Assembly (NCBI RefSeq): GCF_036971445.1
Contig: NC_091471.1
Location: forward strand, 289,168,001 to 289,232,000
Length of the DNA: 64,000 nt
Reading direction: 5' to 3'
From: Narcine bancroftii
Lineage: Eukaryota
Positions 5,647 to 40,569 of the stretch are shown in pieces. How positions within the stretch are numbered: the first letter of the stretch is position 1; each line of letters starts with the position of its first letter. A model generated the notes under the pieces. The model made no database searches. It was not told the DNA's origin and saw only the letters and a list, made by a program, of their open reading frames with translations. The position numbers and the translations under genes were made by a program.

Positions 5647-5715
5647 GGGAGTTTGTCGCCGTTAGGGTCGCTCAGTCTGAGACTGATGGTAAAATCATGC
5701 ATGAACTACTAAATT

Positions 5716-6110
5716 TAAATGAATAAATGTATTCCATTAGAAAAAATAACATATAGGTTAAGAAATAATATTGAAATATTCGAACAAGTATGGGAGCCTT
5801 ACATTAAATACAATAGCGAAAACCTACCGGGGACAAACATTACCTAAGTTGATGGAAGGAGAAGGAAAGAAAAGAATGGACTCAGTAGAATTTCTGGTGT
5901 ATTTTTGTTGAATGACAACATTGTCTGACTGGCTTAATGCAACCTAGATTGTATACCTAAAATGGATGAGGGGGGGGGGGGGGTGGGGGGTGGCTTGGGA
6001 GGAGGGAGGGGGGGGGGAGAGAAAAAGTCACTGTATATGTGTGAAAAAGAAATAGTGTATATCATGGCTAATGTGATTTATGGTGTGAAAAATAAAAAAT
6101 TAAAAAAAAA
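5716..6110 (+). mobile_element. 5'-truncated L1/Tx1-type LINE 3' fragment inserted in the 3' UTR of the cluster 1 C gene
   Basis: Matches the 3' end of the long L1 at ~29548-29932 (gaataaatgtattccattagaaaaaataac...), has a G-rich tract and an A-rich tail; absent at the paralogous position in cluster 3. Confidence 0.85.
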
Positions 6111-6375
6111 ATTATGTCAATTAGTGCCAGAAAACATCATTGGAACTGGAATGTCTCATTGAACCAAGTGGCTGGTCACTTTCATCCCGTGCAGCCCCTC
6201 GAGGGGAGCAACTTCGGGAACAAATACTCATCTCACACAGTGTAAACCACAGGAGGTGAAACAGAAGCAGAGAATACAGTGAAGAGCGAGCGCGCAGAGC
6301 GGGGAGCGGCTGAAAGATAAAAGGCAGTGATCTCCCGTTCATCAGGGAGCGAAGGCGCCCGAGGCCGCGCTCTGT

Positions 6376-6698
6376 TCAGCAGCTGGAATGTGCGACTGTA
6401 GCGGACGTTGCCGAGGCAGCTCCTTGTTGAACCGTGCAGGAGTACACCTTGCCTCTGCTCCAGTCTGTGCCGGGCACCTTCAGGTAGCTGCTGAGACTGA
6501 AGGTGTTGTCCTTGTTCCGCATCGCCGGGCTGGTTTCCACCCCCGTCCTCGCCGGACTCCAGTCCACGGTCCAGCTGACGGCGGGGAAGCCCAGCGACAG
6601 TTTACTGACCAGGCAAACCAAGGTGCCCGCTCCTTGAGCGGAGATCTCCTCGGAAGACGGCCCGAGCAGTTTCAATGAAGGTTCGGGGAGATTCTCAG
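6376..6698 (-). CDS. Ig light chain (sigma-type) constant exon, cluster 1; open reading frame
   Basis: Acceptor ttcccatttcAG, phase 1; (A)ENLPEPSLKLLGPSSEEISAQGAGTLVCLVSKL...VSWTVD...FSLSSYL...VYSCTVQ...SSC*; C1-set Cys/Trp/Cys plus the terminal interchain Cys. Differs from the cluster 3 C by V>L, G>W (VDW vs VDG) and Q>H. Confidence 0.93.
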
Positions 6699-7594
6699 CT
6701 GAAATGGGAACAAGAGAAACATTTCAGGTCACGGAAGAACTCGGCTAATTTTAGAATTTGGCACAAGCGCGAGGCAGATGGAGATGGATCCAAACACGTG
6801 TGAGATTTTGCACATTGAGAGATCAAATGTGTCCACTGAAGGACGGGTCACATCAGCATGGATCCAAGATGCTGCCTGAATTCGAGGTTTAATCTACGAG
6901 GGATGGGAGAGGTTTCTTTTCTCTTCTGCTTGAGAGATTGACGGGGTAATTTAGGAGTGGTACAGGTCGTTTGGAAGATGAGGTCTCATCCTCTGGATTA
7001 ATAAAAAAGTGAAAGGGAAGAGGACACGAGTTTAAAGTGAAGGGGGGATTTTGAAGGAGACGCGCTGGGCGAGTTGACTTTTATAGAGCAGTGCGTGTCT
7101 GGGATCGTGGAGAAGCAGCTATCAGACAAATGTTTAAGAGTGGGTTCAAGACACAAATTGAAAGGAAAGGAGGAACGGCTTCCATCATGTACATTCATTT
7201 GAAATCTCATCTCGTTCCGTGCAGACGTCGTGGGCCGAAAGGTCGAATTTAGTGCCACGCCGTTCTGTATTCGATGGAAAGATGAATCGTTAGCGTCTGA
7301 AACACAATATTGATGAGCCCATCTCAAGGACAACGCAAAAGGGCCCGATAAATATCACAATTTAACATTACGGGCTCATTTAAGGTGAATCAAAAATCAC
7401 ATTTGAATGAAAAATTGTCAATAAATGTGGGTGACAATTCCCCGAAAACCCTGGAGTAGAACTGGCGCTGGACACGGAATAGGATTCGTTTGTCAATCAA
7501 CATTTTCAGAAGGCAACAACCTGGAAATGATTCATTGTCAGGTGTCTGTAGTAGAGCCGTCGGTCACGGCAGGAGGATGTTGCCAGACACTGAC

Positions 7595-7631
7595 CTGGAA
7601 CGAGGAGCTTGGTCCCTGGGCCGAACACCCA
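7595..7631 (-). CDS. Unrearranged IgL J segment, cluster 1 (WVFGPGTKLLVP)
   Basis: FGxG motif; splice donor G/GTCAGT; immediately preceded by a heptamer. Confidence 0.9.
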
Positions 7632-7670
7632 CACGGTGCGAGGTTCCAGCCTTCAGTCCGTGCGGTTACG
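7632..7670 (+). promoter_or_regulatory. J-side recombination signal sequence (23-bp spacer position), degenerate nonamer
   Basis: Heptamer CACGGTG (6/7 to CACAGTG) abuts J; after 23 nt the sequence is GCGGTTACG (3/9 to ACAAAAACC). Confidence 0.65.
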
Positions 7671-7984
7671 CAGGGCCCTGAATCAGGCAGAAAGACGCGG
7701 TCAGACGCTCCAGGAGCAGCAGGAAACCAGACTACACACATCCCGCGTGTCCCAGCTGGGGTGGGGCAGGGAGGGGTGAACTCACAGCCCCTTCGCCTGC
7801 TTGGAATTAACCGGCAGCAAGAGCCGGCAATGAACGGCGGGGTTGGGAATTTTCCCAAATCTGAAATGATTGGAATTGGAAAATACTGCATAAAAGGTCA
7901 AACGGAAGTTAATTAACGAGAAGTGAAATATTAAAATGTTTTCTCCCGGGACAAAGATGTGAAGTGGATGGTGCTGCAGCTCCC

Positions 7985-8012
7985 AGTTTCTGTTTGACCG
8001 CCTCTGGCTGTG
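7985..8012 (-). promoter_or_regulatory. V-side 12-RSS
   Basis: Minus strand CACAGCC - AGAGGCGGTCAA (12 nt) - ACAGAAACT directly after the V coding end. Confidence 0.88.
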
Positions 8013-8223
8013 ACACCAAGTATTGCTCGATGAACCCACTTCCCGCAGTGATAGACGGCGGCGTCCTTCACCTCCACCTGGTTGATGAGCAACCGGTAAA
8101 CGGTGGCCGCGCTGTTGCCATTCGCCAACTGCATCGTCCCGATGTTACATTCCAGCGTGGCGCTGGATCCCGCATTCACGGACACGCGAGACAGAGGTTG
8201 AGACAGAATCTGCGAGTCTCCAG
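8013..8223 (-). pseudogene. Unrearranged IgL sigma V pseudo-segment, cluster 1
   Basis: Paralogous to V2/V3 but with a net 117-nt in-frame loss of CDR1-FR2-CDR2, a 3-nt net insertion in FR1, YYC>YHC, and a 1-nt deletion after CGKW. Confidence 0.9.
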
Positions 8224-8327
8224 CTGAAAAAGAGCAGCAATTCCACATTAATCAGTGACCCTTGACTGCGAGCCCGAGAGCCCACATCAGAAACCGCTGG
8301 CGGGGCAGAGTTGCCGCCTGTACTTAC

Positions 8328-8373
8328 AGCCCAGCCACAGCGCCAGAGACCAGAGAAAACACAGCGTCCGCAT
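8328..8373 (-). CDS. IgL leader exon, cluster 1 (MRTLCFLWSLALWLG)
   Basis: ATG, hydrophobic signal peptide, phase-1 donor T/GTAAGT, 104-nt intron to the V acceptor. Confidence 0.9.
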
Positions 8374-8452
8374 CGTTGCTGCCCGTCACCTTCCTGCCTC
8401 CCTTCACCGCTGTGTCTGGGACAGACTGTGGCGACGCTGCGGATGGAACCCA

Positions 8453-8493
8453 CTTATAGAGACATTGGCACCGGGAAGGAAATCCATGCAAAT
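8453..8493 (-). promoter_or_regulatory. Ig light-chain promoter, cluster 1 (octamer plus TATA-like)
   Basis: ATTTGCAT (light-chain orientation) at 8486-8493 and TATAAG at 8453-8458, upstream of the leader ATG. Confidence 0.85.
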
Positions 8494-9117
8494 CGGAGCA
8501 AGTCACACTGACCAACCAGAGGAAGGACCTGAAACCCTCCCATTCGCCGTCAGTTGCCGTCCGCTGGAGGCGGTGACACGGTCAACGTCCGACAGATGTG
8601 GGGAAACAAGGTTCATTGTCTGAAATTTCCCACTTTCTCCCTGCATTTCCCTGATTCCGCTGAATACCGCTCTCCATCCCTCACCCAGAGATGCCCCTCA
8701 CACCTCCAGTGATAATAAGGTGGGGCATTGCCGGCTTCCTATGTGAATAGTTCAGATACTTGGTGCAAACCCATACTGATACTGTGAGTGGAAGATTGTA
8801 ATTCAGTCTGAAGAGGGAGATGAAATATGATTTCAGTAAGAGTGACTTGTGGGGTTGTGGCAATCTCTCGGGTATTCATTAACCGTTTGGGGGTGAAACG
8901 TCCATCTTTACCCAGTCTGTGACCATGACCAATGACCCTTCCCACATGAATAATTCAAACATTGAGATCAAACACAATTATAAAGATTAAAGGAACAAGT
9001 TCCATTATTGTCACATCATACTACATTTAGAATGTAACACACATGAAATTCTTTAACTTTGTCTTCTGTCAAGAAGACAGAGAGTTGCTACTTTATCCAG
9101 CGCCCCTCATAAAAATG

Positions 9118-9190
9118 TGGCCCCAGCGAGGAACGAATTCACAACCCCTGATTTACAAGACCGTGCTCCAACCACGGAGCTGACAGAGCT
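9118..9190 (-). pseudogene. tRNA-Thr(TGT)-like pseudogene
   Basis: Minus strand AGCTCTGTCAGCTCCGTGGTTGGAGCACGGTCTTGTAAATCAGGGGTTGTGAATTCGTTCCTCGCTGGGGCCA resembles vertebrate tRNA-Thr-TGT (anticodon loop CTTGTAA); followed by a T5 run; stems disrupted. Confidence 0.75.
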
Positions 9191-9502
9191 TCTTTGAAGA
9201 GTTCAATTCAATCGAAATGTGAGGATGAAATCTGGTCTCATCGTGTGAATCGTGGAACTACGGGAAACATTGGAAGATGTTATTCTCCCATTGCATGGGG
9301 AAACCTCCCATCTTTACCCAGTGTTTCCATTCCCACCCCATGCCCTAACCTTCTGTACTAGGAGTGATTTACAATCACCAATAGAATGACCTCACCCATT
9401 TCCTTGCCAGTGACAGCCATATTCTCTGTTTGCCTAGCATAGCAGCATCTGGGGTAATGCTCTTGGAATATCAGTATCAACCACATAGGTAGAAAGGTAA
9501 CA

Positions 9503-9660
9503 AGGTGGTGCAGTGACACAAATGATAGACACTTGCTCACAGTTACAGTGACCCAGGATCAAACCTTAAAACACAGGGATGTTTGCACTGAGTTTACAAA
9601 TTCTCCCTGTGACTGTGTGCATTTCCTTCAGCTGTTCCAGTTTGCTCCCACATCCTAGGA
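9503..9660 (+). mobile_element. Degenerate tRNA-derived SINE (V-SINE/HE1-like); paralogous copies near 13655-13830 and 39634-39795
   Basis: A-box-like ggtggtgcagtg followed by the gagttt...ttctccctgtgactg..tttcc...ccagttt.ctcccacatcc core typical of fish/shark V-SINEs. Confidence 0.6.
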
Positions 9661-10289
9661 TTCACTGCTCCAAGTTATTCCCAGTCCAAGGATGATCAGT
9701 GGGATGTGCAGGAAGTTGAAGGAATGAGGTGAAAATGAAATGAGATTTAATGAGGGTTTGTGTAAGTATGTTCTTGATGAACCCAGTGGGCCAAAGGGCT
9801 TGTTTTTGAACTGCATATTTCCAAACTCCCAAAATTCATGAAGGTAGCGAGGAGGTTAAAATGGAAGATCAGTGATGGTACAGAAAACATAGAACATGGT
9901 GCAACACAGGAACGGGCCCTTCTGGACATGATACATGTAGCATACAGGATCCACAAATTAAACTCAAATTCTGCTGCATTACAAGATACATATCATGTTA
10001 TTCCCTACTTAATGTGTTTATCGTGAAATGCCTTGAACACTGCCATGGTAATCCCTGGATTACTTCCCTGCTTCACTTCAGAGGGTTTAGTTAAAGGGAA
10101 GATCATGCAAACTTATATTTGTTTGATGCAAGGGGTTAGATCAGTTGGGGATGAGTACCAGATCAGGGAGAGATGCAGTCAGCCCAGGCCAGTACCTCAA
10201 CAGAGCTTGGGCCAGAACCCTCACAGGAAATCTCACTGCTGCATGAGGAAAGGTTTCAGCCAGTTTGTTGAGGAATGAGAACAGGAAGG

Positions 10290-10342
10290 TCACACAGATG
10301 ACGGCCCGAGCAGTTTCACTGAAGGTTCGGGGAGATTCTCCG
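10290..10342 (-). CDS. Truncated IgL C exon, cluster 2: (A)ENLPEPSVKLLGPSSV*
   Basis: Intact acceptor identical to cluster 3; identity to C stops at ~10300, then unrelated sequence provides TCT GTG TGA in frame. Confidence 0.85.
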
Positions 10343-12410
10343 CTGAAATGGGAACAAGAGAAACATTTCAGGTCACGGAAGAACTCGGCTAATTTTAGAA
10401 TTTGGCACAAGCGCGAGTGAAAGGTTCCAGCTTCCTAGAGTGGGGCCCAGGGTCTCACCGATGGGCCGGGAAGGGTCCATGGACGAGTCCGTTTGCAAGT
10501 TATCATTGAACGTTTTGTTTTCTGATTCTTTTAGCGACTCCCTGGTTCACAAAACAACCCTCTGGGTCACTGCGCTGCCACCTCCCAGGGCCCATCCCGA
10601 CCTGTCTCACATAAACAGCAGGAGACTTCCTCAGGGTCGCTTCACGTGGCCTCAGCACCTCTGGTCAGTGACGGAAGAGAACCATTAACCAACTTCAGAG
10701 CATCAACCAGTGGTCGGAAGCGGCCCTTCGCTCGCCCCACCCTTCACTAGTGCCCCCACTGAGCCACCCAAGGTGAGAGCGCGAATCAACCCCTCTCCCC
10801 CTCCCTCCCCCCGACCTGCCCGGTGGGCGACGACGCCAGATGCGCGGTCCTGAGCTTCACGGTCGCCATGTGATCACGTCTCGGGATTCAAGTCGCACTC
10901 ACTGTGGGACCAGAGGATGCGGGATTCTCCCCACAGCCCGACCTACGGCCTCAAATGGTGCAGCGACGTGAATCGCTGAGTGGACGAAAGAAGGAGATCC
11001 CAATGGAATAGATGGCAGGAGAAGAGAAATACAGGGCAAGGAGAGACATTTTTATTGGGTGGGAACCTGCAGCAGACTCCCATCGTCACTGCGACGACTG
11101 GAGATTCGCTGCAAGTCTGAGGGAGGTTCCGCTGGAGGGACCCAGCGCAACAACTGAAAGCGCATCCTTCATCTGTGTTGCTGACCGTGGCCAGTCTTCA
11201 ATCGACATGGTCTTTCGGACACTTTAGAAAAGCGTCACCGCGTGCACACACTTGAACCGAACCAGCAGGAAAGCCGACAAACTAAGGGGAAAGAATCCAC
11301 GGGAACTCATTCAAACCTGCAGTGTGCCTCTCTATAACGATAGAGGGAGGATTGAGGATGATGGGTAGATTCCGAGTTGCTGAGAGTTCAACTCAATGAT
11401 GGAACAGGACGCACGAGTTACAGATGCGGGCGGAGAAATGGCAGATCCAGTTTAATCCAAACAGCTGGGAGATTTGGCACATTGGAGGGTCAAACGTATA
11501 CAGTCAATGACGGGGCTTTTAACCGCGAGGATGTCCAGAAGGATGTGAGGGTGCAATTCACAGTTGGCTGAAAGTGGCCCTGCAGGTGGATCGGGTGGCG
11601 GCGAGGACATGTGGCAGGCTGCCTTCATCGGTCGAGAGGTGTGGGGAAGTCATGTTTCCCGCTTTGGGGAGGACTGTGTGCAATTTTCCTCGCACAGGCA
11701 GGATGTGGGTGTGTTGGAAGAGGGGGCAGAAAATATTTCCCAAGATCCAGCCTGAATTAGAAATTCTGAGCGACGAGAGATGGGACAAAGTTGCCTTTCT
11801 TTTGCTCTCTTCTGCTTGCGAGATAAAACGGAGAGGTACAGGGAGGTTGGTTAATGGGATCTCTTTCCCTGGGTAAAATAAGAGGATATCTATTTAAAGT
11901 GAGGGGTGGCTATTTGAGGAGTTGTACTGGGCAAGTTTATATTTACAGGGTGGCAGGTGTCTGGAACGCGGGGCCCGGGATGGTGAGAAACAGATACATC
12001 GCGAATGCTAAAGGGGGCGGGGGGTTCAGAGAGACACAAAAGGCCAGGAATGGAGGGACGACACGGATCGAGTGCAGATTCTGTTTCATTTGGCGCCTGT
12101 TTTGGTGCCGCACTGTTCGACAATATGAATGACTTCTCAGGGATAGGACAAAAGGACCCCAGAAAGAGCATTAATTAGCAGAACGGGTCCATTTAAGGGT
12201 TATTAGAAAATCTCAACTGTCCACGAAAAGTTGTCATTAAATGTCGGTGACAATTCACCAAACCCCATGGAGTCGAACTGGCGCTGGACACGGAATAGGA
12301 TCCGTTTGTAAATCAACATTTTCAGGAGGTGACAACCTAGAACTGATTCATTGACCTGGGTCTGGAGTAGAGCCGTCGGTCATGGCAGGAGGATGTTGCC
12401 GGACACTTAC

Positions 12411-12767
12411 CTGTAACGAAGAGTTTGGTCCCTGGGCCGAACACAAAAGTATTGCTCGTCGAAAACCACTTCCCGCAGTAATAGACGGCGGCGTCATTCA
12501 CCTCCACCTGGTTGATGATCAACCGGTAAACGGTGCCCTCGCTGTTGCCATTCGCTGTGAAACGGTTGCTGTTGAATCCGGGTCCGTAGCTCGGGGTACC
12601 ATAGGAGTAATAGTGATAGAGGATCCACTGCAGATGTGTTCCCGGAGTCTGTTTGTAGAAGCTCAAATAATAGCTGTCCTTGGTCCCGATGTTACATTCC
12701 AGCGTGGCGCTGGATCCCGCATTCACGGACACGCTCGGAGGTTGATACAGAGTCTGCGAGTCTCCAG
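12411..12767 (-). CDS. Germline-joined IgL sigma VJ exon, cluster 2
   Basis: 357-nt phase1-phase1 exon: (S)GDSQTLYQPPSVSVNAGSSATLEC...FYKQ...YGPGFNSNRF...DAAVYYCGKWFSTSNTFVFGPGTKLFVT, donor G/GTAAGT; no RSS between V and J; long CDR2 typical of sigma. Confidence 0.93.
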
Positions 12768-12871
12768 CTGAAAAAGAGCAGCAATTCCACATTAATCAGT
12801 GACCCTTGACTGCGAGCCCGAGAGCCCACATCAGAAACCACTGGCGGGGCAGAGTTGCCGCCTGTACTTAC

Positions 12872-12917
12872 AGCCCAGCCACAGCGCCAGAGACCAGAGA
12901 AAACACAGCGTCCGCAT
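12872..12917 (-). CDS. IgL leader exon, cluster 2
   Basis: Same MRTLCFLWSLALWLG leader with a GT donor. Confidence 0.92.
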
Positions 12918-12996
12918 CGTTGCTGCCCGTCACCTTCCTGCCTCCCTTCACCGCTGTGTCTGGGACAGACTGTGGCGACGCTGCGGATGGAACCCA

Positions 12997-13037
12997 CTTA
13001 TAGAGACATTGGCACCGGGAAGGAAATCCATGCAAAT
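12997..13037 (-). promoter_or_regulatory. Ig light-chain promoter, cluster 2
   Basis: ATTTGCAT at 13030-13037 and TATAAG at 12997-13002. Confidence 0.85.
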
Positions 13038-14149
13038 CGGAGCAAGTCACACTGACCAACCAGAGGAAGGACCTGAAACCCTCCCATTCGCCGTCAGTTG
13101 CCGTCCGCTGGAGGCGGTGACACGGTCAACATCCGACAGATGTGGAGAAACAAGGGGCAGGTGGTTCATTGTCTGAAATTTCCCACTTTCTCCCTGCATT
13201 TCCCTGATTCCGCTGAATACCGCTCTCCATCCCTCACCCAGAGATGCCCCTCACACCTCCAGTGATAATAAGGTGGTGCATTGAAGGCTTCCCATTTGAA
13301 CAGTTCAGACTCTGGGCTCAAACATACCCTGATAATTGAAGGATTTCAATTTAGTCAAAATGTGAGGATGAAATCTGGTTTCACGTAGGGCCCAGGAAAC
13401 ACTGGAAGATTCATTCTCTCTGTTTGGAAGGACCTCTCCCATCCCTACCCAGTTTGTCTATATTTCCATTCTCACAACATGCCCTGAACTGTCTGCAACT
13501 ACCAATAGACCACCCTCACCCATCTCCTCCAGGAACCAAATGTCAGCCTTGCCAGTGACAACCACATTCCCAGGTTTCCTGGAATCGCAGCATCTGGGGC
13601 AATGCTCTTGGAATATCAGTATTAATGACCGAGGTAGAAAGGTGTTGAGCTCCTGGGTGGTGTAGTTTCAACAGCTGATGGAACTGCTGGCTCACGGTTA
13701 CTGTGACCAAGGATCAATTGTGACCCACGGTGCCGTGGGCGCGGACATTACACGTTTTCCCTATGACTGTGAATTTCCTTCAGCTGCTCCATTTTCCTCC
13801 TGTATTCCAAGACGTGGTTGGGTAGGTTAATTCACTGCTGTATATCATCCTTAGTCCAAGGATGATCAGTGGAATCTTCAGGGAGTTCAGGGAATGAAAT
13901 GGGATTTGAAGGTTTGAGTATGTTTTTGATGAACTCATGGGAAGTCTCACTGGGCCATGAGGAGAGGTTGTAGCCAGTTTGTAGGGGAATGAGCACTGGA
14001 AGGTTGCACTGAAAGGGGAGCAAATCCATTAGGAGAGATATGTAATTCCAGACAAGAAATATATTTTTTCAATTCTGACCAGAATGTGCAGGATACTGGA
14101 TTTGAAGTTCATGTGTATTAAAGGAAGAAGCCTATGAGAACATACTGTT

Positions 14150-28800: not shown

Positions 28801-29710
28801 GAAAAAAGGGATTAAAAGAATAGAAAATTGTTTTCGGGGAATAAATTATTATCCTTTGAACAAATGAAGGATAAATATAATATAACTCAAGATACAGTGC
28901 TGGCATATTACCAATTGAAATCCTATTTAAAGGATAAATTGGGAAGTAGTCTGAAGTAGTCAAGCAATTTTGAATATCTGATTACAGACACAATGATAAT
29001 TAAAAAATTTATAACAAACATGTATATCAAATTACAAGAAAAGGAGAATGAGGAAATAAATGATAAAACTATACAAAAGTGGGAACAAGATCTAAACATA
29101 AAGATAAAAAAGGAAACATGGGAGAGGTTATGTTTAGGAACTATGAGAAATACAATAAATACGAGATTACGTATGATACAATATAATTGGATACATAGGT
29201 TATATATCACTCCTCAAAAGTTAAATAAATGGGATCCAACAGTATCTGACAGATGTTTTCATTGTAAAAAAGAAATAGGAACAACAATTCATGCAATCTC
29301 GACTTGTAAAAAGGTGAAAAAATTTTGGGAAGATCTAAACCAGATATTAAATAAAATTTCAGAAAGCAATATACCAAAAAACCCAGAGATCTTCCTCCTA
29401 AGTAACATAAAAAATAAAGAATTTGGACTTGATTTGGAGGGTGTACAAAAAAGATTTGTTAAGATAGCCCTAGCTGTAGCAAAAAAATGCATTATGTCAA
29501 ACTGGAAATTAGAAGATAATTTGAAAATACAGGCAATGGTATATAGAAATGAATAAATGTATTCCATTAGAAAAAAATAACATATAGTTTAAGAAATAAT
29601 ATAACATTATTTGAACAAATATGGGAGCCGTACATGGAATATAATAGAGAAAACCTACCGGGACATCTATCACCTAAAATGACAAAAGGAAAAGAGAATG
29701 GAAAGAATTG
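25900..29710 (+). pseudogene. L1 ORF2p (endonuclease-RT), several frameshifts and stops
   Basis: Consecutive ORF pieces 25900-26388, 26409-26633, 26615-28729, 28993-29556. Confidence 0.9.
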
Positions 29711-29934
29711 ACTCAGTGGAAGTTTTTGTTCGTTAATGTTGAGTGACAACATTGTTTGATGGGTTTGATGTATCTTGGACTCAGAGTTTTGAATGGATGG
29801 AGGGGGAGGTGGGGGGGGGAGGGGAGGAGGGAGGGGGGAGAAAACGACACTGTATATATTTGAAAGGAGAAATGTGTATATCTTGAATAATGTGATCTAT
29901 AGTGTGAAAAATAAAAAATTTAAAAAATAAAAGA

Positions 29935-35315: not shown

Positions 35316-35647
35316 GGGACCGTTACAGTCTCTCGGTCTGTCGCTAATAACCAATTATAAAATCATTCATTTATGATGTTAAATTCTCCCATGGTGCAAG
35401 AGGAAACCGTTCACCAACTGGAATGTCTCATTGAACCAAGTGGCTGGTCACTTTCATCCCGTGCAGCCCCTCGAGGGGAGCAACTTCGGGAACAAATACT
35501 CATCTCACACAGTGTAAACCACAGGAGGTGAAACAGAAGCAGAGAATACAGTGAAGAGCGAGCGCGCAGAGCGGGGAGCGGCTGAAAGATACAAGGCAGT
35601 GATCTCCCGTTCATCAGGGAGCGAAGGCGCCCGAGGCCGCGCTCTGT

Positions 35648-35970
35648 TCAGCAGCTGGATTGTGCGACTGTAGCGGACGTTGCCGAGGCAGCTCCTTGTT
35701 GAACCGTGCAGGAGTACACCTTGCCTCTGCTCCAGTCTGTGCCGGGCACCTTCAGGTAGCTGCTGAGACTGAAGGTGTTGTCCTTGTTCCGCATCGCCGG
35801 GCTGGTTTCCACCCCCGTCCTCGCCGGACTCCCGTCCACGGTCCAGCTGACGGCGGGGAAGCCCAGCGACAGTTTACTGACCAGGCAAACCAAGGTGCCC
35901 GCTCCTTGAGCGGAGATCTCCTCGGAAGACGGCCCGAGCAGTTTCACTGAAGGTTCGGGGAGATTCTCCG
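35648..35970 (-). CDS. IgL sigma constant exon, cluster 3 (intact)
   Basis: Acceptor AG; (A)ENLPEPSVKLLGPSSEE...TLVCLV...VSWTVDGS...YSCTV...SSC*. Confidence 0.95.
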
Positions 35971-38014
35971 CTGAAATGGGAACAAGAGAAACATTTCAGG
36001 TCACGGAAGAACTCGGCTAATTTTAGAATTTGGCACAAGCGCGAGTGAAAGGTTCCAGCTTCCTAGAGTGGGGCCCAGGGTCTCACCGATGGGCCGGGAA
36101 GGGTCCATGGACGAGTCCGTTTGCAAGTTATCATTGAACGTTTTGTTTTCTGATTCTTTTAGTGACTCCCTGGTTCACAAAACAACCCTCTGGGTCACTG
36201 CGCTGCCACCTCCCAGGGCCCATCCCGACCTGTCTCACATAAACAGCAGGAGACTTCCTCAGGGTCGCTTCACGTGGCCTCAGCACCTCTGGTCAGTGAC
36301 GGAAGGGAACCATTATCCAACTTCAGAGCATCAACCAGTGGTCGGAAGCGGCCCTTCGCTCGCCCCACCCTTCACTAGTGCCCCCACTGAGCCACCCAAG
36401 GTGAGAGCGCGAATCAACCCCTCTCCCCCTCCCTCCCCCCGACCTGCCCGGTGGGCGACGACGCCAGATGCGCGGTCCTGAGCTTCACGGTCGCCATGTG
36501 ATCACGTCTCGGGATTCAAGTCGCACTCACTGTGGGACCAGAGGATGCGGGATTCTCCCCACAGCCCGACCTACGGCCTCAAATGGTGCAGCGACGTGAA
36601 TCGCTGAGTGGACGAAAGAAGGAGATCCCAATGGAATAGATGGCAGGAGGAGAGACATTTTTATTGGGTGGGAACCTGCAGCAGACTCCCATCGTCACTG
36701 CGACGACTGGAGATTCGCTGCAAGTCTGAGGGAGGTTCCGCTGGAGGGACCCAGCGCAACAACTGAAAGCGCATCCTTCATCTGTGTTGCTGACCGTGGC
36801 CAGTCTTCAATCGACATGGTCTTTCGGACACTTTAGAAAAGCGTCACCGCGTGCACACACTTGAACCGAACCAGCAGGAAAGCCGACAAACTAAGGGGAA
36901 AGAATCCACGGGAACTCATTCAAACCTGCAGTGTGCCTCTCTATAACGATAGAGGGAGGATTGAGGATGATGGGTAGATTCCGAGTTGCTGAGAGTTCAA
37001 CTCAATGATGGAACAGGACGCACGAGTTACAGATGCGGGCGGAGAAATGGCAGATCCAGTTTAATCCAAACAGCTGGGAGATTTGGCACATTGGAGGATC
37101 AAACGTATACAGTCAATGACGGGGCTTTTAACCGCGAGGATGTCCAGAAGGATGTGAGGGTGCAATTCACAGTTGGCTGAAAGTGGCCCTGCAGGTGGAT
37201 CGGGTGGCGGCGAGGACATGTGGCAGGCTGCCTTCATCGGTCGAGAGGTGTGGGGAAGTCATGTTTCCCGCTTTGGGGAGGACTGTGTGCAATTTTCCTC
37301 GCACAGGCAGGATGTGGGTGTGTTGGAAGAGGGGGCAGAAAATATTTCCCAAGATCCAGCCTGAATTAGAAATTCTGAGCGACGAGAGATGGGAAAAAGT
37401 TGCCTTTCTTTTGCTCTCATCTGCTTGCGAGATAAAACGGAGAGGTACAGGGAGGTTGGTTAATGGGATCTCTTTCCCTGGGTAAAATAAGAGGACATCT
37501 ATTTAAAGTGAGGGGTGGCTATTTGAGGAGTTGTACTGGGCAAGTTTATATTTACAGGGTGGCAGGTGTCTGGAACGCGGGGCCCGGGATGGTGAGAAAC
37601 AGATACCACGCGAATGTTTAAGGGGGGGTTCAGAGAGACACAAAAGGTCAGGAATGGAGGGACGACACGGATCGAGTGCAGATTCTGTTTCATTTGGCGC
37701 CTGTTTTGGTGCCGCACTGTTCGACAATATGAATGACTTCTCAGGGATAGGACAAAAGGACCCCAGAAAGAGCATTAATTAGCAGAACGGGTCTATTTAA
37801 GGGTTATTAGAAAATCTCAACTGTCCAAGAAAAGTTGTCATTAAATGTCGGTGACAATTCACCAAACCCCATGGAGTCGAACTGGCGCTGGACACGGAAT
37901 AGGATCCGTTTGTAAATCAACATTTTCAGGAGGTGACAACCTAGAACTGATTCATTGACCTGGGTCTGGAGTAGAGCCGTCGGTCATGGCAGGAGGATGT
38001 TGCCGGACACTTAC

Positions 38015-38371
38015 CTGTAACGAAGAGTTTGGTCCCTGGGCCGAACACAAAAGTATTGCTCGTCGAAAACCACTTCCCGCAGTAATAGACGGCGGCGTCA
38101 TTCACCTCCACCTGGTTGATGATCAACCGGTAAACGGTGGCCGCGCTGTTGCGATTCGCTGTGAAACGGTTGCTGTTGAATCCGGGTCCGTAACCCGGGG
38201 AATTATAGGAGTGATGGTGATAGAGGACCAACTGCGGATGTGTTCCCGGAGTCTGTTTGTAGAAGATAACAGCATAGCCGTCCTTCGTCCCGATGTTACA
38301 TTCCAGCGTGGCGCTGGATCCCGCATTCACGGACACGCTCGGAGGTTGAGACAGAGTCTGCGAGTCTCCAG
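38015..38371 (-). CDS. Germline-joined IgL sigma VJ exon, cluster 3
   Basis: QTLSQPPSVSVNAGSSATLECNIGTKDGYAVIFYKQ...YHHHSYNSPGYGPGF...YYCGKWFSTSNTFVFGPGTKLFVT; canonical splice sites; no RSS. Confidence 0.95.
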
Positions 38372-38475
38372 CTGAAAAAGAGCAGCAATTCCACATTAAT
38401 CAGTGATTCTTTACTGCGAGCCCGAGAGCCCACATCAGAAACCGCTGGCGGGGCAGAGTTGCCGCCTGTACTTAC

Positions 38476-38521
38476 AGCCCAGCCACAGCGCCAGAGACCA
38501 GAGAAAACACAGCGTCCGCAT
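38476..38521 (-). CDS. IgL leader exon, cluster 3
   Basis: MRTLCFLWSLALWLG with a GT donor. Confidence 0.93.
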
Positions 38522-38600
38522 CGTTGCTGCCCGTCACCTTCCTGCCTCCCTTCACCGCTGTGTCTGGGACAGACTGTGGCGACGCTGCGGATGGAACCCA

Positions 38601-38641
38601 CTTATAGAGACATTGGCACCGGGAAGGAAATCCATGCAAAT
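38601..38641 (-). promoter_or_regulatory. Ig light-chain promoter, cluster 3
   Basis: ATTTGCAT at 38634-38641 and TATAAG at 38601-38606. Confidence 0.85.
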
Positions 38642-39252
38642 CGGAGCAAGTCACACTGACCAACCAGAGGAAGGACCTGAAACCCTCCCATTCGCCGTCA
38701 GTTGCCGTCCGCTGGAGGCGGTGACACGGTCAACATCCGACAGATGTGGGGAAACAAGGTTCATTGTCTGAAATTTCCCACTTTCTCCCTGCATTTCCCT
38801 GATTCCGCTGAATACCGCTCTCCATCCCTCACCCAGAGATGCCCCTCACACCTCCAGTGATAATAAGGTGGGGCATTGCCGGCTTCCTATGTGAATAGTT
38901 CAGATACTTGGTGCAAACCCATACTGATACTGTGAGTGGAAGATTGTAATTCAGTCTGAAGAGGGAGATGAAATATAATTTCATTAAGAGTGACTTGTGG
39001 GGTTGTGGCAATCTCTGGGATATTCATTAACCGTTTGGGGGTGAAACATCCCGTCTTTACGCAGTCTGTGACCATGACCAATGACCCTTCCCACATGAAT
39101 AATTCAGACATTGGGCTCAAACACAATTGTAAAGATTAAAAGAACAAGTTCCATTATTGTCACATCATACTACATTTAGAATGTAACACACATGAAATTC
39201 TTTAACTTTGTCTACTGTAAGGAAGATGGAGAGTTGCTACATCACAAAAATG

Positions 39253-39325
39253 AGGCCCCAACGAGGAACAAATTCACAACCCCTGATTTACAAGACTGTG
39301 CTCCAACCACGGAGCTGGCAGAGCT
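39253..39325 (-). pseudogene. tRNA-Thr(TGT)-like pseudogene, paralog of 9118-9190
   Basis: Same degenerate tRNA at the equivalent position upstream of cluster 3. Confidence 0.7.
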
Positions 39326-40569
39326 TCTTTGAGGAGTTCAATTCAAACGAAATGTGAGGATGACATCTGGTCTCATTGTGTGAATCGTGGAACTACAGGA
39401 AACATTGGAAAATGTTATTCTCCCATTGCATGGGGAAACCTCCCATCTTTACCCAATGTTTCCATTCCCACCCCATGCCCTGACCTTCTATACGAGGAGT
39501 GATTTACAACCACCAATAGAATGACCTCATCCATTTCCTTGCCAATGACAGGGGGGTTGCCTGGAATAGCAGCGTCTGGGGTAATGCTCTTGGAATATCA
39601 GTATCATCCACATAGGTAGAAAGGTAACCACCTAGGTGGTGCAGTGACACAGCTGATGGAGACACTAGCTCACCGTTACAGTGACCCAGGATCAAACCTT
39701 AAAATACAGTGATGTTTGCACTGAGTTTACAAATTCTCCCTGTGACTGTGTGCATTTCCTTCAGCTGCTCCAGTTTGCTCCCACATCCCAGGATTCACTG
39801 CTCCAAGTTATTCCCAGTCCAAGGATGATCAGTGGGATGTGCAGGAAGTTGAAGGAATGAGGTGAAAATGAAATGAGATTTATTGAGGGTTTGTATATGT
39901 TCTTGATGAACCCAATGGGCCAAAGGGCTTGTTTCTGAACTGCATATTTCCAAACTGCCAGAATTCATGAAGGTAGTGAGGAGATTAAAATGGAAGATCA
40001 GTGATGGTATAGAAAACATAGAACATGGTGCAACACAGGAATGGGCCCTTCTGGTCATGATACATGTGGCATACAGGATCCACAAATTAAACTCAAATTC
40101 TGCTGCATTACAAGATACATAACATGTTATTCCCTACTTATTAATGTGTTTATTGTGAAATGCCTTGAACACTGCCATGGTCATCCCTGCATTACTTCCC
40201 TGCTTCACTCCAGAGGGTTTGGAGAAAGGGAAGATCATGGAAACTTATATTTGTTTGATGCATGAGCAAAGGAGGTAGATCAGTTGGGGTTGGGGACCAG
40301 ATCAGGGAGAGATGCAGTCAGACCAGGCCAGCACCTCAACAGAGCTTGGGCCAGAATCCTCACAGGAAGTCTCACTGCTGCATGATGAGAGGCTTCAGCC
40401 AGTTTGTTGAGAAATGATAACAGGAAGGTCACACAGCAAATGAGCAAATGTGGTAGAAGAGCTATGTGGTTCCAGAACAAGAAATATATCTTTCTATCAA
40501 GAGCACATTAAGCATGAAACTAGTTTTGAAATGCATGTGTATAAACAGAGAAGAAAATAAGAACATTGT

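What the first reader, a model, noticed from the sequence alone, without database searches (positions are those of the whole stretch)
10290..12917. Predicted secreted V-only (constant-less) invariant light chain, VpreB-like in architecture
Seen: intact octamer/TATA promoter, leader, pre-joined VJ, canonical donor and acceptor, then a mini-exon (A)ENLPEPSVKLLGPSSV-stop created by a breakpoint at ~10298-10300. The stop is in the last exon, so NMD is not expected, and an ATTAAA lies at 9746-9751 on the minus strand. The product is a signal peptide, one complete V domain and a 17-aa tail, with no interchain Cys. Established: mammalian VpreB is a non-rearranging V-only chain of the surrogate light chain. 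Inference: an independently arisen surrogate-like or soluble single-domain Ig molecule; alternatively just a young pseudogene.
Basis: partly seen in the sequence, partly recalled or inferred. Interest (0 to 1): 0.8.

Follow-up and report, generated by a model that had tools for sequence, protein, structure and literature searches.

The report
Truncated ray antibody light-chain gene copy
One copy of a sigma antibody light-chain gene in the lesser electric ray lost almost all of its constant-region exon at a DNA rearrangement junction; the predicted "variable-domain-only" protein is a correct reading of the letters, but RNA data do not support it, so it is most likely a broken gene copy.

Summary
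On the minus strand there is an octamer and TATA-like promoter, a 46-nt leader, a germline-joined VJ exon (12767-12411), a GT donor, an AG acceptor at 10343, and 15 constant-region codons that run into a stop (10292-10290).

The cause is a rearrangement junction at 10296/10297. It fuses the start of the C exon of cluster B to the 5' flank of the next cluster, A (6376-8493). A has an unjoined, internally deleted V but an intact C exon. A third cluster, C (35648-38521), is complete.

The genome is Narcine bancroftii and the isotype is sigma. RefSeq has no V-only product here. Its model XP_069784647.1 joins B's leader and VJ to A's C exon.

In two RNA runs with very high light-chain expression:
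- no contig lies on 9420-10219, where the V-only mRNA's 3' UTR would be;
- contigs reaching the junction continue as an intact C exon;
- no B-to-A splice was reported.

A DNA contig from another haplotype crosses the junction, so it is not an assembler join.

VpreB's defining features are absent: the J strand is present and the tail is just the start of CL.

Verdict: a C-less relic (about 0.55). Rivals are a composite B-VJ/A-C gene (about 0.28) and a functional V-only chain (about 0.07). The scan had already noted the composite reading on this stretch.

The parts
12997..13037 (-). Promoter of cluster B: octamer ATTTGCAT (13037-13030) and TATA-like TCTATAAG (13004-12997)
   Evidence: Pattern positions. 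The same two motifs lie upstream of clusters A (8493-8486, 8460-8453) and C (38641-38634, 38608-38601).
12872..12917 (-). Leader exon of B (46 nt: 15 codons plus 1 nt)
   Evidence: It matches residues 1-15 of RefSeq XP_069784647.1 exactly.
12411..12767 (-). Germline-joined VJ exon of B (sigma V domain, no RSS)
   Evidence: Open frame. Pfam V-set E 2.7e-18. Exact substring of P0002. P0002 is 65% identical to nurse shark sigma L chain.
10343..12410 (-). J-C intron of B (2068 nt), GT..AG
   Evidence: It differs from cluster C's intron by 14 substitutions and 2 indels. B-like intron contigs occur in the RNA runs at depth 24-33.
10297..10342 (-). Stub of the C exon: the first 46 nt of a sigma C exon
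   Evidence: Alignment with the C exons of A and C. tblastn shows 15/15 residues identical to cluster C.
10290..10296 (-). Flank-derived letters that add V and the TGA stop; the junction lies at 10296/10297
   Evidence: These letters align with the 5' flank of cluster C, with the match ending at 40436.
8836..10296 (-). 5' flank of cluster A, placed directly behind the stub; includes ATTAAA at 9751-9746
   Evidence: 8134-10297 matches 38285-40436 at 93.5%. Both RNA runs have zero depth over 9420-10219, while DNA run X1 has depth 12-21 there.
6376..8493 (-). Cluster A. Promoter; leader 8373-8328; unjoined pseudo-V 8223-8013 with an internal deletion of about 128 nt; heptamer 8012-8006; J 7631-7595; intact C exon 6698-6376
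   Evidence: C1-set E 5.8e-17. The C exon is an exact substring of P0002. Unspliced RNA contigs cover 6744-8045.
35648..38641 (-). Cluster C, the complete sister gene: leader 38521-38476, joined VJ 38371-38015, C exon 35970-35648
   Evidence: Its V and C exons are exact substrings of XP_069784648.1 (P0066).

Best explanation
Cluster B is a germline-joined sigma light-chain gene of Narcine bancroftii that lost all but the first 15 codons of its constant exon, its 3' UTR and its poly(A) site. The loss happened at a structural rearrangement that fused the exon stub to the 5' flank of the neighbouring cluster A. That rearrangement was either a 3.7-kb tandem duplication with one breakpoint in the C exon, or a deletion between two adjacent clusters.

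As it stands, B is a C-less relic. Its promoter, leader, VJ exon and splice sites are intact because they were homogenised very recently with cluster C. A message spliced to the stub has no nearby poly(A) signal and does not accumulate. The 17-residue tail and stop are accidental letters of the flank.

Shown: the anatomy, the junction, its presence in reads, and the absence of RNA contigs behind the stub. Inferred: that no stable V-only protein is made.
For: 1; homology to the C exons of A and C stops at 10297, and homology to the 5' flank of cluster C starts there. Clusters A and C keep a full 106-residue C1-set exon ending in Cys.
2., DNA: X1 contig 9982-10326 crosses the junction without mismatch.
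3., RNA: runs X5 and X6 have depth 1e4-1e5 on light-chain exons, 20-250 on introns and 0 on 9420-10219. X5 contigs that reach 10297 continue with the intact C-exon letters.
4; there is no AATAAA or ATTAAA for 540 nt after the stop.
5; no annotated V-only protein exists among proteins of 65-206 aa.
6; the B and C introns differ at only 14 of 2068 sites, so an intact V does not require long-term selection on B.
Against: - The V exon is fully open. It differs from cluster C's V at 21 of 357 sites, mostly replacements (pN 0.068, pS 0.031), against 0.7% in the intron. This is not what plain neutral decay of a dead copy gives, although patchwise gene conversion also explains it.
- B-like intron contigs are transcribed in X5 and X6.
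- RefSeq treats the VJ as part of a coding gene.
- Logan contigs drop rare variants, and the tool warns that a hole proves nothing.
- The tissues, the developmental stages and the junction genotype of the RNA animals are unknown.
Confidence: 0.55

Rival explanations
1. Composite gene. B's VJ exon skips the stub, which lacks both a downstream donor and a poly(A) site and so is poorly defined as an exon. It then splices across 5.7 kb, over A's dead V and J, to A's intact C exon at 6698. The result is a normal 241-residue sigma light chain. Two defective neighbours would then complement each other, with two V regions sharing one C.
For: - RefSeq XP_069784647.1 (P0002) is exactly leader + V of B + C exon of A.
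- A's own V is destroyed by an internal deletion, but its C exon and an AATAAA at 5646-5641 persist.
- B's V is intact and carries mostly replacement differences.
Against: - One search reported no joint 12411->6698 in either RNA run.
- The stretch 9420-10219, which would lie within that 5.7-kb intron, has depth 0 although other introns show 20-250.
- A's C-exon letter at 6675 is absent from X5 (0 of 2279) and about 1% in X6 (183 of 15491).
- The stub acceptor is identical to the functional one and comes first.
Confidence: 0.28
2. Functional V-only chain. The VJ exon splices to the stub, the message ends near the ATTAAA at 9751-9746, and a secreted sigma V domain with a 17-residue tail acts as a soluble single-domain Ig or a surrogate partner of heavy chains.
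For: - The promoter, leader, open V domain, canonical splice sites and a stop in what would be the last exon are all present.
- The 12411->10342 joint is abundant in RNA. It cannot be assigned to B, because cluster C and other paralogs are identical around it.
- No surrogate light chain is known in fishes (PMC5192425, PMC9614664), so the niche is open.
Against: - No RNA contig lies on the predicted 3' UTR, and junction-reaching contigs continue as intact C.
- The V keeps its J strand and the tail is the start of CL, unlike VpreB (PMC9614664).
- There is no C domain and no Cys to bind a heavy chain.
- The truncation is explained by a structural junction.
- No such protein is annotated.
Confidence: 0.07
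3. The junction is an assembly error or a rare private allele, and the normal haplotype has a complete cluster B.
For: - B-like intron contigs are transcribed in X5 and X6, but nothing follows them behind the stub. This would fit animals whose B has a whole C exon.
- Organism B (X7) shows no contig on 9820-10219.
Against: - X1's contig 9982-10326 crosses the junction with no mismatch, and X1 is not the window's haplotype: it has 13 or more fixed differences and a 9-nt insertion.
- X7 has low depth, so its gap is uninformative.
Confidence: 0.07

Closest known systems
Germline-joined Ig light-chain clusters of cartilaginous fishes (sigma isotype; Lee et al. 2000, PMC2193156; Anderson et al. 1995, PMC2192082; review PMC5192425)
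   Same: - Leader, a V fused to J in the germline without RSS, a J-C intron of about 2 kb, and an octamer promoter.
- 65% identity to nurse shark sigma L chain over 241 residues without gaps, measured through the RefSeq composite.
- Sister clusters in the window have the full V-J-C layout.
   Different: The C exon stops after 15 codons and there is no native 3' UTR or poly(A) site. The next cluster's flank follows directly.
RefSeq XP_069784647.1, 'immunoglobulin lambda-1 light chain-like' of Narcine bancroftii
   Same: It uses exactly this leader and VJ exon.
   Different: It ignores the stub and takes the C exon of cluster A, 5.7 kb downstream. That splice was not seen in the RNA contigs laid here.
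Mammalian VpreB (surrogate light chain; PMC9614664)
   Same: A non-rearranging gene that would give a V-type domain without a C domain.
   Different: - VpreB lacks the J-encoded strand, which lambda5 supplies. It carries a charged unique C-terminal region, and it is a eutherian innovation.
- Here the J strand is present, the tail is CL strand A, and no lambda5-like partner is evident.
- The nearest relatives are ordinary sigma light chains.
Nurse shark germline-joined chains used early in life (IgM1gj and its sigma-2 partner, as reviewed in PMC5192425)
   Same: An invariant germline-joined V region that needs no recombination.
   Different: Those chains keep constant domains and are documented as proteins. 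This one has no C domain and no transcript evidence.

Membership tests
Cartilaginous-fish Ig sigma light-chain cluster gene | Signal peptide plus a V-set domain most similar to sigma light chains | tested here: met
   Pfam V-set E 2.7e-18. The hits named sigma by their sources are P0036 and P0041. P0002, which contains this V exactly, is 65% identical to P0041.
Cartilaginous-fish Ig sigma light-chain cluster gene | V and J in one cluster, either joined in the germline or flanked by RSS | tested here: met
   B's V runs into FGPGTKLFVT without a heptamer. Cluster A shows the unjoined state with a heptamer at 8012-8006 and J at 7631-7595.
Cartilaginous-fish Ig sigma light-chain cluster gene | One complete C1-set constant exon ending in the interchain Cys | tested here: not met
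   Only 15 of 106 C residues are present in B. A and C have the full exon (C1-set E 5.8e-17 and 1.1e-18).
Cartilaginous-fish Ig sigma light-chain cluster gene | Own 3' UTR with a poly(A) signal | tested here: not met
   Cluster C has AATAAA 333 nt after its stop. B has only an ATTAAA 540 nt downstream, in A's flank, and there is no RNA contig on it.
VpreB / surrogate light chain | V domain that lacks the J-encoded G strand, which lambda5 supplies | tested here: not met
   The J motif FGPGTKLFVT is encoded in the VJ exon. The feature is as described in PMC9614664.
VpreB / surrogate light chain | Unique, charged C-terminal region unrelated to Ig domains | tested here: not met
   15 of the 17 tail residues (after the junctional Ala) are identical to the start of the sigma C exon. 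The last residue and the stop come from flank letters.
VpreB / surrogate light chain | Non-rearranging gene without RSS | tested here: met
   There is no RSS, but this holds for every germline-joined light-chain gene in this locus.
VpreB / surrogate light chain | Expressed in B-cell precursors and paired with a lambda5-like chain and a heavy chain | not testable with these tools
   The tissues of runs X5 and X6 are not given, and no V-only transcript was seen in them.

The most novel reading that the evidence does not exclude
A germline-encoded, constant-less sigma V domain is made at a stage or in a tissue not sampled here, for example in the embryo or neonate. It would serve as a soluble single-domain binder or as a stand-in partner for nascent heavy chains, in a lineage with no known surrogate light chain.
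Probability: 0.05. Interest if true: 0.75.

Novelty: new member of a known kind. Interest (0 to 1): 0.25.

Why it matters
As read here, this is an ordinary casualty of the duplications, deletions and gene conversions that churn multi-cluster light-chain loci. The locus is already annotated in RefSeq under a different gene model.

Two things remain of modest interest:
- Whether B's VJ really splices over a dead V-J to the neighbour's C exon. If it does, two V regions share one C, a small step from cluster to translocon organisation.
- Whether cartilaginous fishes have any surrogate partner for heavy chains. This locus offers no positive evidence for one.

Tried and rejected
The RefSeq locus, the evidence behind the model, and the A-like paralog that encodes P0001 could not be inspected.
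- The word search with the V exon alone gave one hit, because full-length light chains fall outside its length window. Searching with that hit, P0001, recovered the family.
The leader, VJ exon, stub and C exons were handled separately by reference, and compared with RefSeq proteins only as separate substrings.
- A RAG-mediated origin of the junction was considered, because the flank side reads CACACAG. It was rejected: the break lies on the wrong side of that heptamer-like word, and no nonamer sits at 12 or 23 nt.
- The 12411->10342 splice joints could not be assigned to B. Cluster C and other paralogs are identical over the J end and the first 46 nt of the C exon.
- Diagnostic V letters in the RNA contigs are mosaic, B-type at some sites and C-type at others. 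Expression of B's V exon could therefore not be shown or excluded.
- Tandem duplication and inter-cluster deletion could not be told apart. Both predict that A's flank homology ends at 10297 while the flanks of B and C run on. The identities are mosaic: X_A-X_C 93.5%, X_B-X_C about 70%, intron B-C 99.3%, intron A-C 80%.
- A search of the scan's notes by words returned nothing.
- No structure was predicted, because a V domain's fold would not decide the question.

Full report
**What is in the sequence.** On the minus strand the stretch holds a light-chain gene, called cluster B here, with these parts:
- Octamer ATTTGCAT (13037-13030) and TATA-like TCTATAAG (13004-12997).
- ATG at 12917 and a 46-nt leader exon ending at 12872, with a GT donor.
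- A VJ exon at 12767-12411, open for 118 codons.
- Donor G|GTAAGT at 12410, a 2068-nt intron, and acceptor TTTCAG| at 10343.
- An exon of 15 constant-type codons followed by V and TGA at 10292-10290.

The V exon is a V-set domain (Pfam E 2.7e-18). It ends in a J motif with no recombination signal, so V and J are joined in the germline.

**Why the constant exon stops.** A self-comparison of the window shows two sister clusters.
- Cluster C (35648-38641) is complete.
- Cluster A (6376-8493) lies directly downstream of B in the direction of transcription.

Both sisters have a 106-residue C1-set exon ending in Cys. B matches them only down to 10297.

From 10296 downward, B's sequence is the 5' flank of cluster A, which is 93.5% identical to the 5' flank of C up to 40436. 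B's own 5' flank and C's 5' flank run on past the equivalent points (14012 and 40436). The junction therefore joins the start of a C exon to the upstream flank of the next cluster.

Two histories predict exactly this pattern:
- a tandem duplication of a 3.7-kb unit with one breakpoint in the C exon;
- a deletion between two neighbouring complete clusters.

The mosaic identities indicate later gene conversion and do not let me choose between them. Those identities are: A flank to C flank 93.5%, B flank to C flank about 70%, B intron to C intron 99.3%, and A intron to C intron 80%. The V and the stop of the mini-exon are simply flank letters.

**Is the junction real?** DNA run X1 has a contig at 9982-10326 with no mismatch. 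It reaches 29 letters past the junction, about as far as a contig can be expected to run into a three-copy repeat, and two letters short of the tool's 31-letter rule. X1 differs from the window at 13 or more sites at full depth and has a 9-nt insertion at 8609. It is therefore another haplotype or individual. An assembler join is unlikely. Organism B (X7) gives no information at the junction.

**Whose genome, and which isotype?** A word search with the V exon found one protein of Narcine bancroftii. Searching with that protein recovered the family. Three matches fix the genome:
- RefSeq XP_069784648.1 equals cluster C exon for exon.
- XP_069784647.1 equals the leader and V of B followed by the C exon of A, exactly, including A's private residues.
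- XP_069784646.1 is a third joined gene with the same CDR3-J, presumably the cluster just outside the window.

The window is therefore N. bancroftii. The proteins are 65% identical, without gaps, to a nurse shark chain that its source names sigma. RefSeq has no V-only model. None exists among proteins of 65-206 residues in the 5.8-billion set.

**Cluster A.** Its leader and promoter are intact. Its V lacks about 128 nt (CDR1 to FR3) and is not joined: a heptamer lies at 8012-8006 and J at 7631-7595. Its C exon is intact. An AATAAA persists at 5646-5641, behind an insertion of about 0.5 kb in the 3' UTR. B and A thus carry complementary defects, as another note of this scan pointed out (s1-878119).

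**RNA evidence.** Runs X5 and X6 are RNA. They show GT..AG joints, with summed contig depth of 1e4-1e5 on light-chain exons, 20-250 on introns and 0 on intergenic DNA.

- The splice 12411->10342 is abundant (4 and 15 contigs). It cannot be assigned to B, because C and other paralogs are identical over the J end and the first 46 nt of the C exon.
- Contigs that reach 10297 in X5 continue with the letters of an intact C exon.
- No contig of either run lies on 9420-10219, although DNA run X1 covers it at depth 12-21. That stretch would be the 3' UTR of the V-only message up to the ATTAAA, or part of the 5.7-kb intron of the composite.
- No joint 12411->6698 was reported.
- A's private letter at 6675 is absent in X5 and about 1% in X6.
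- Contigs of a B-like intron are present at depth 24-33. They carry both B-type indels, 11 of 14 B-type letters and some private letters. A B-like gene is therefore transcribed, but nothing follows it behind the stub. Either those animals' copy has a whole C exon or the contigs come from a paralog.
- Cluster A is transcribed from its own promoter as unspliced RNA (contigs at 6744-8045, depth 105-250), with a cryptic splice 8071->7677.

All runs are contigs, which show presence and not absence, and the tool says a hole proves nothing. I therefore read this as no support for the V-only message, not as proof that it is absent.

**Selection.** B and C differ at 14 of 2068 intron sites but at 21 of 357 V-exon sites, 18.5 of them replacements (pN 0.068, pS 0.031). 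The differences cluster in CDR1, FR2, CDR2 and FR3. Both variants at several of these sites also occur in sigma chains of other species. X1 carries C-type letters in CDR2 together with B-type letters in FR3. Patchwise gene conversion among family members explains this at least as well as selection on B. Because of the recent homogenisation, an intact V in B needs no long-term constraint.

**Comparison with VpreB.** According to PMC9614664, VpreB lacks the J-encoded strand, which lambda5 supplies, and carries a charged unique tail. The surrogate genes arose in eutherians, and fishes have none (also PMC5192425). B keeps its J strand, its tail is the start of CL, and no lambda5-like partner is evident. 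It shares only the absence of rearrangement, which is common to all joined genes of this locus. It is a sigma light-chain gene that fails the constant-exon and poly(A) criteria.

**Verdict.** The structure is real and explained.
- Most likely (0.55), B is a C-less relic that makes no stable V-only protein.
- The composite gene of RefSeq is a serious rival (0.28), but the contigs did not show it.
- A functional V-only chain is possible but unsupported (0.07).
- A private or erroneous junction is about as unlikely (0.07).

The spliced product was not joined for any search.

Noticed in passing
window 35416-40436 compared with 6144-13383: Cluster C is a mosaic. Its 3' part and C exon are 99.2% like A, and its 5' flank is 93.5% like A. 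Its promoter-to-stub core is 96-99% like B, and B's own flanks are only about 70-78% like C's. This looks as if the germline-joined VJ plus intron was copied by gene conversion into an A-type (unjoined) unit. All three joined genes (XP_069784646/647/648) share one CDR3-J.
   Followed up: partly
window 12411-12767 compared with 38015-38371: The V exons of B and C differ eight times more than their introns (5.9% against 0.7%), mostly by replacements in CDR1, FR2, CDR2 and FR3. DNA run X1 carries a third combination: C-type CDR2 with B-type FR3.
   Followed up: partly
window 6744-8071: The unjoined, internally deleted cluster A is transcribed in both RNA runs as unspliced RNA through V end, RSS, J and the J-C intron (depth 105-250). 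It also shows a cryptic GT..AG splice 8071->7677 from FR3 to just upstream of J. RefSeq protein P0001 shows that a second A-like cluster with the same V deletion exists elsewhere on the chromosome.
   Followed up: partly
window 5680-6143: An insertion of about 0.5 kb interrupts A's 3' UTR between the stop and the conserved AATAAA (5646-5641). Part of it (5717-6111) is 78% like 29547-29930, inside the stretch another note calls an L1/Tx1 element.
   Followed up: no
window 8820-9219: A short stretch in A's 5' flank has DNA contig depth around 1000 in X1 and RNA depth up to 1900 in X6. It is a high-copy, transcribed repeat.
   Followed up: no
window 10903-10342: One X6 RNA contig (1567 nt, depth 33) retains the B-like intron from the VJ donor down to 10903. 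It then splices with GT..AG ends to the C-exon acceptor at 10342. This is a non-productive isoform that uses a cryptic donor.
   Followed up: no
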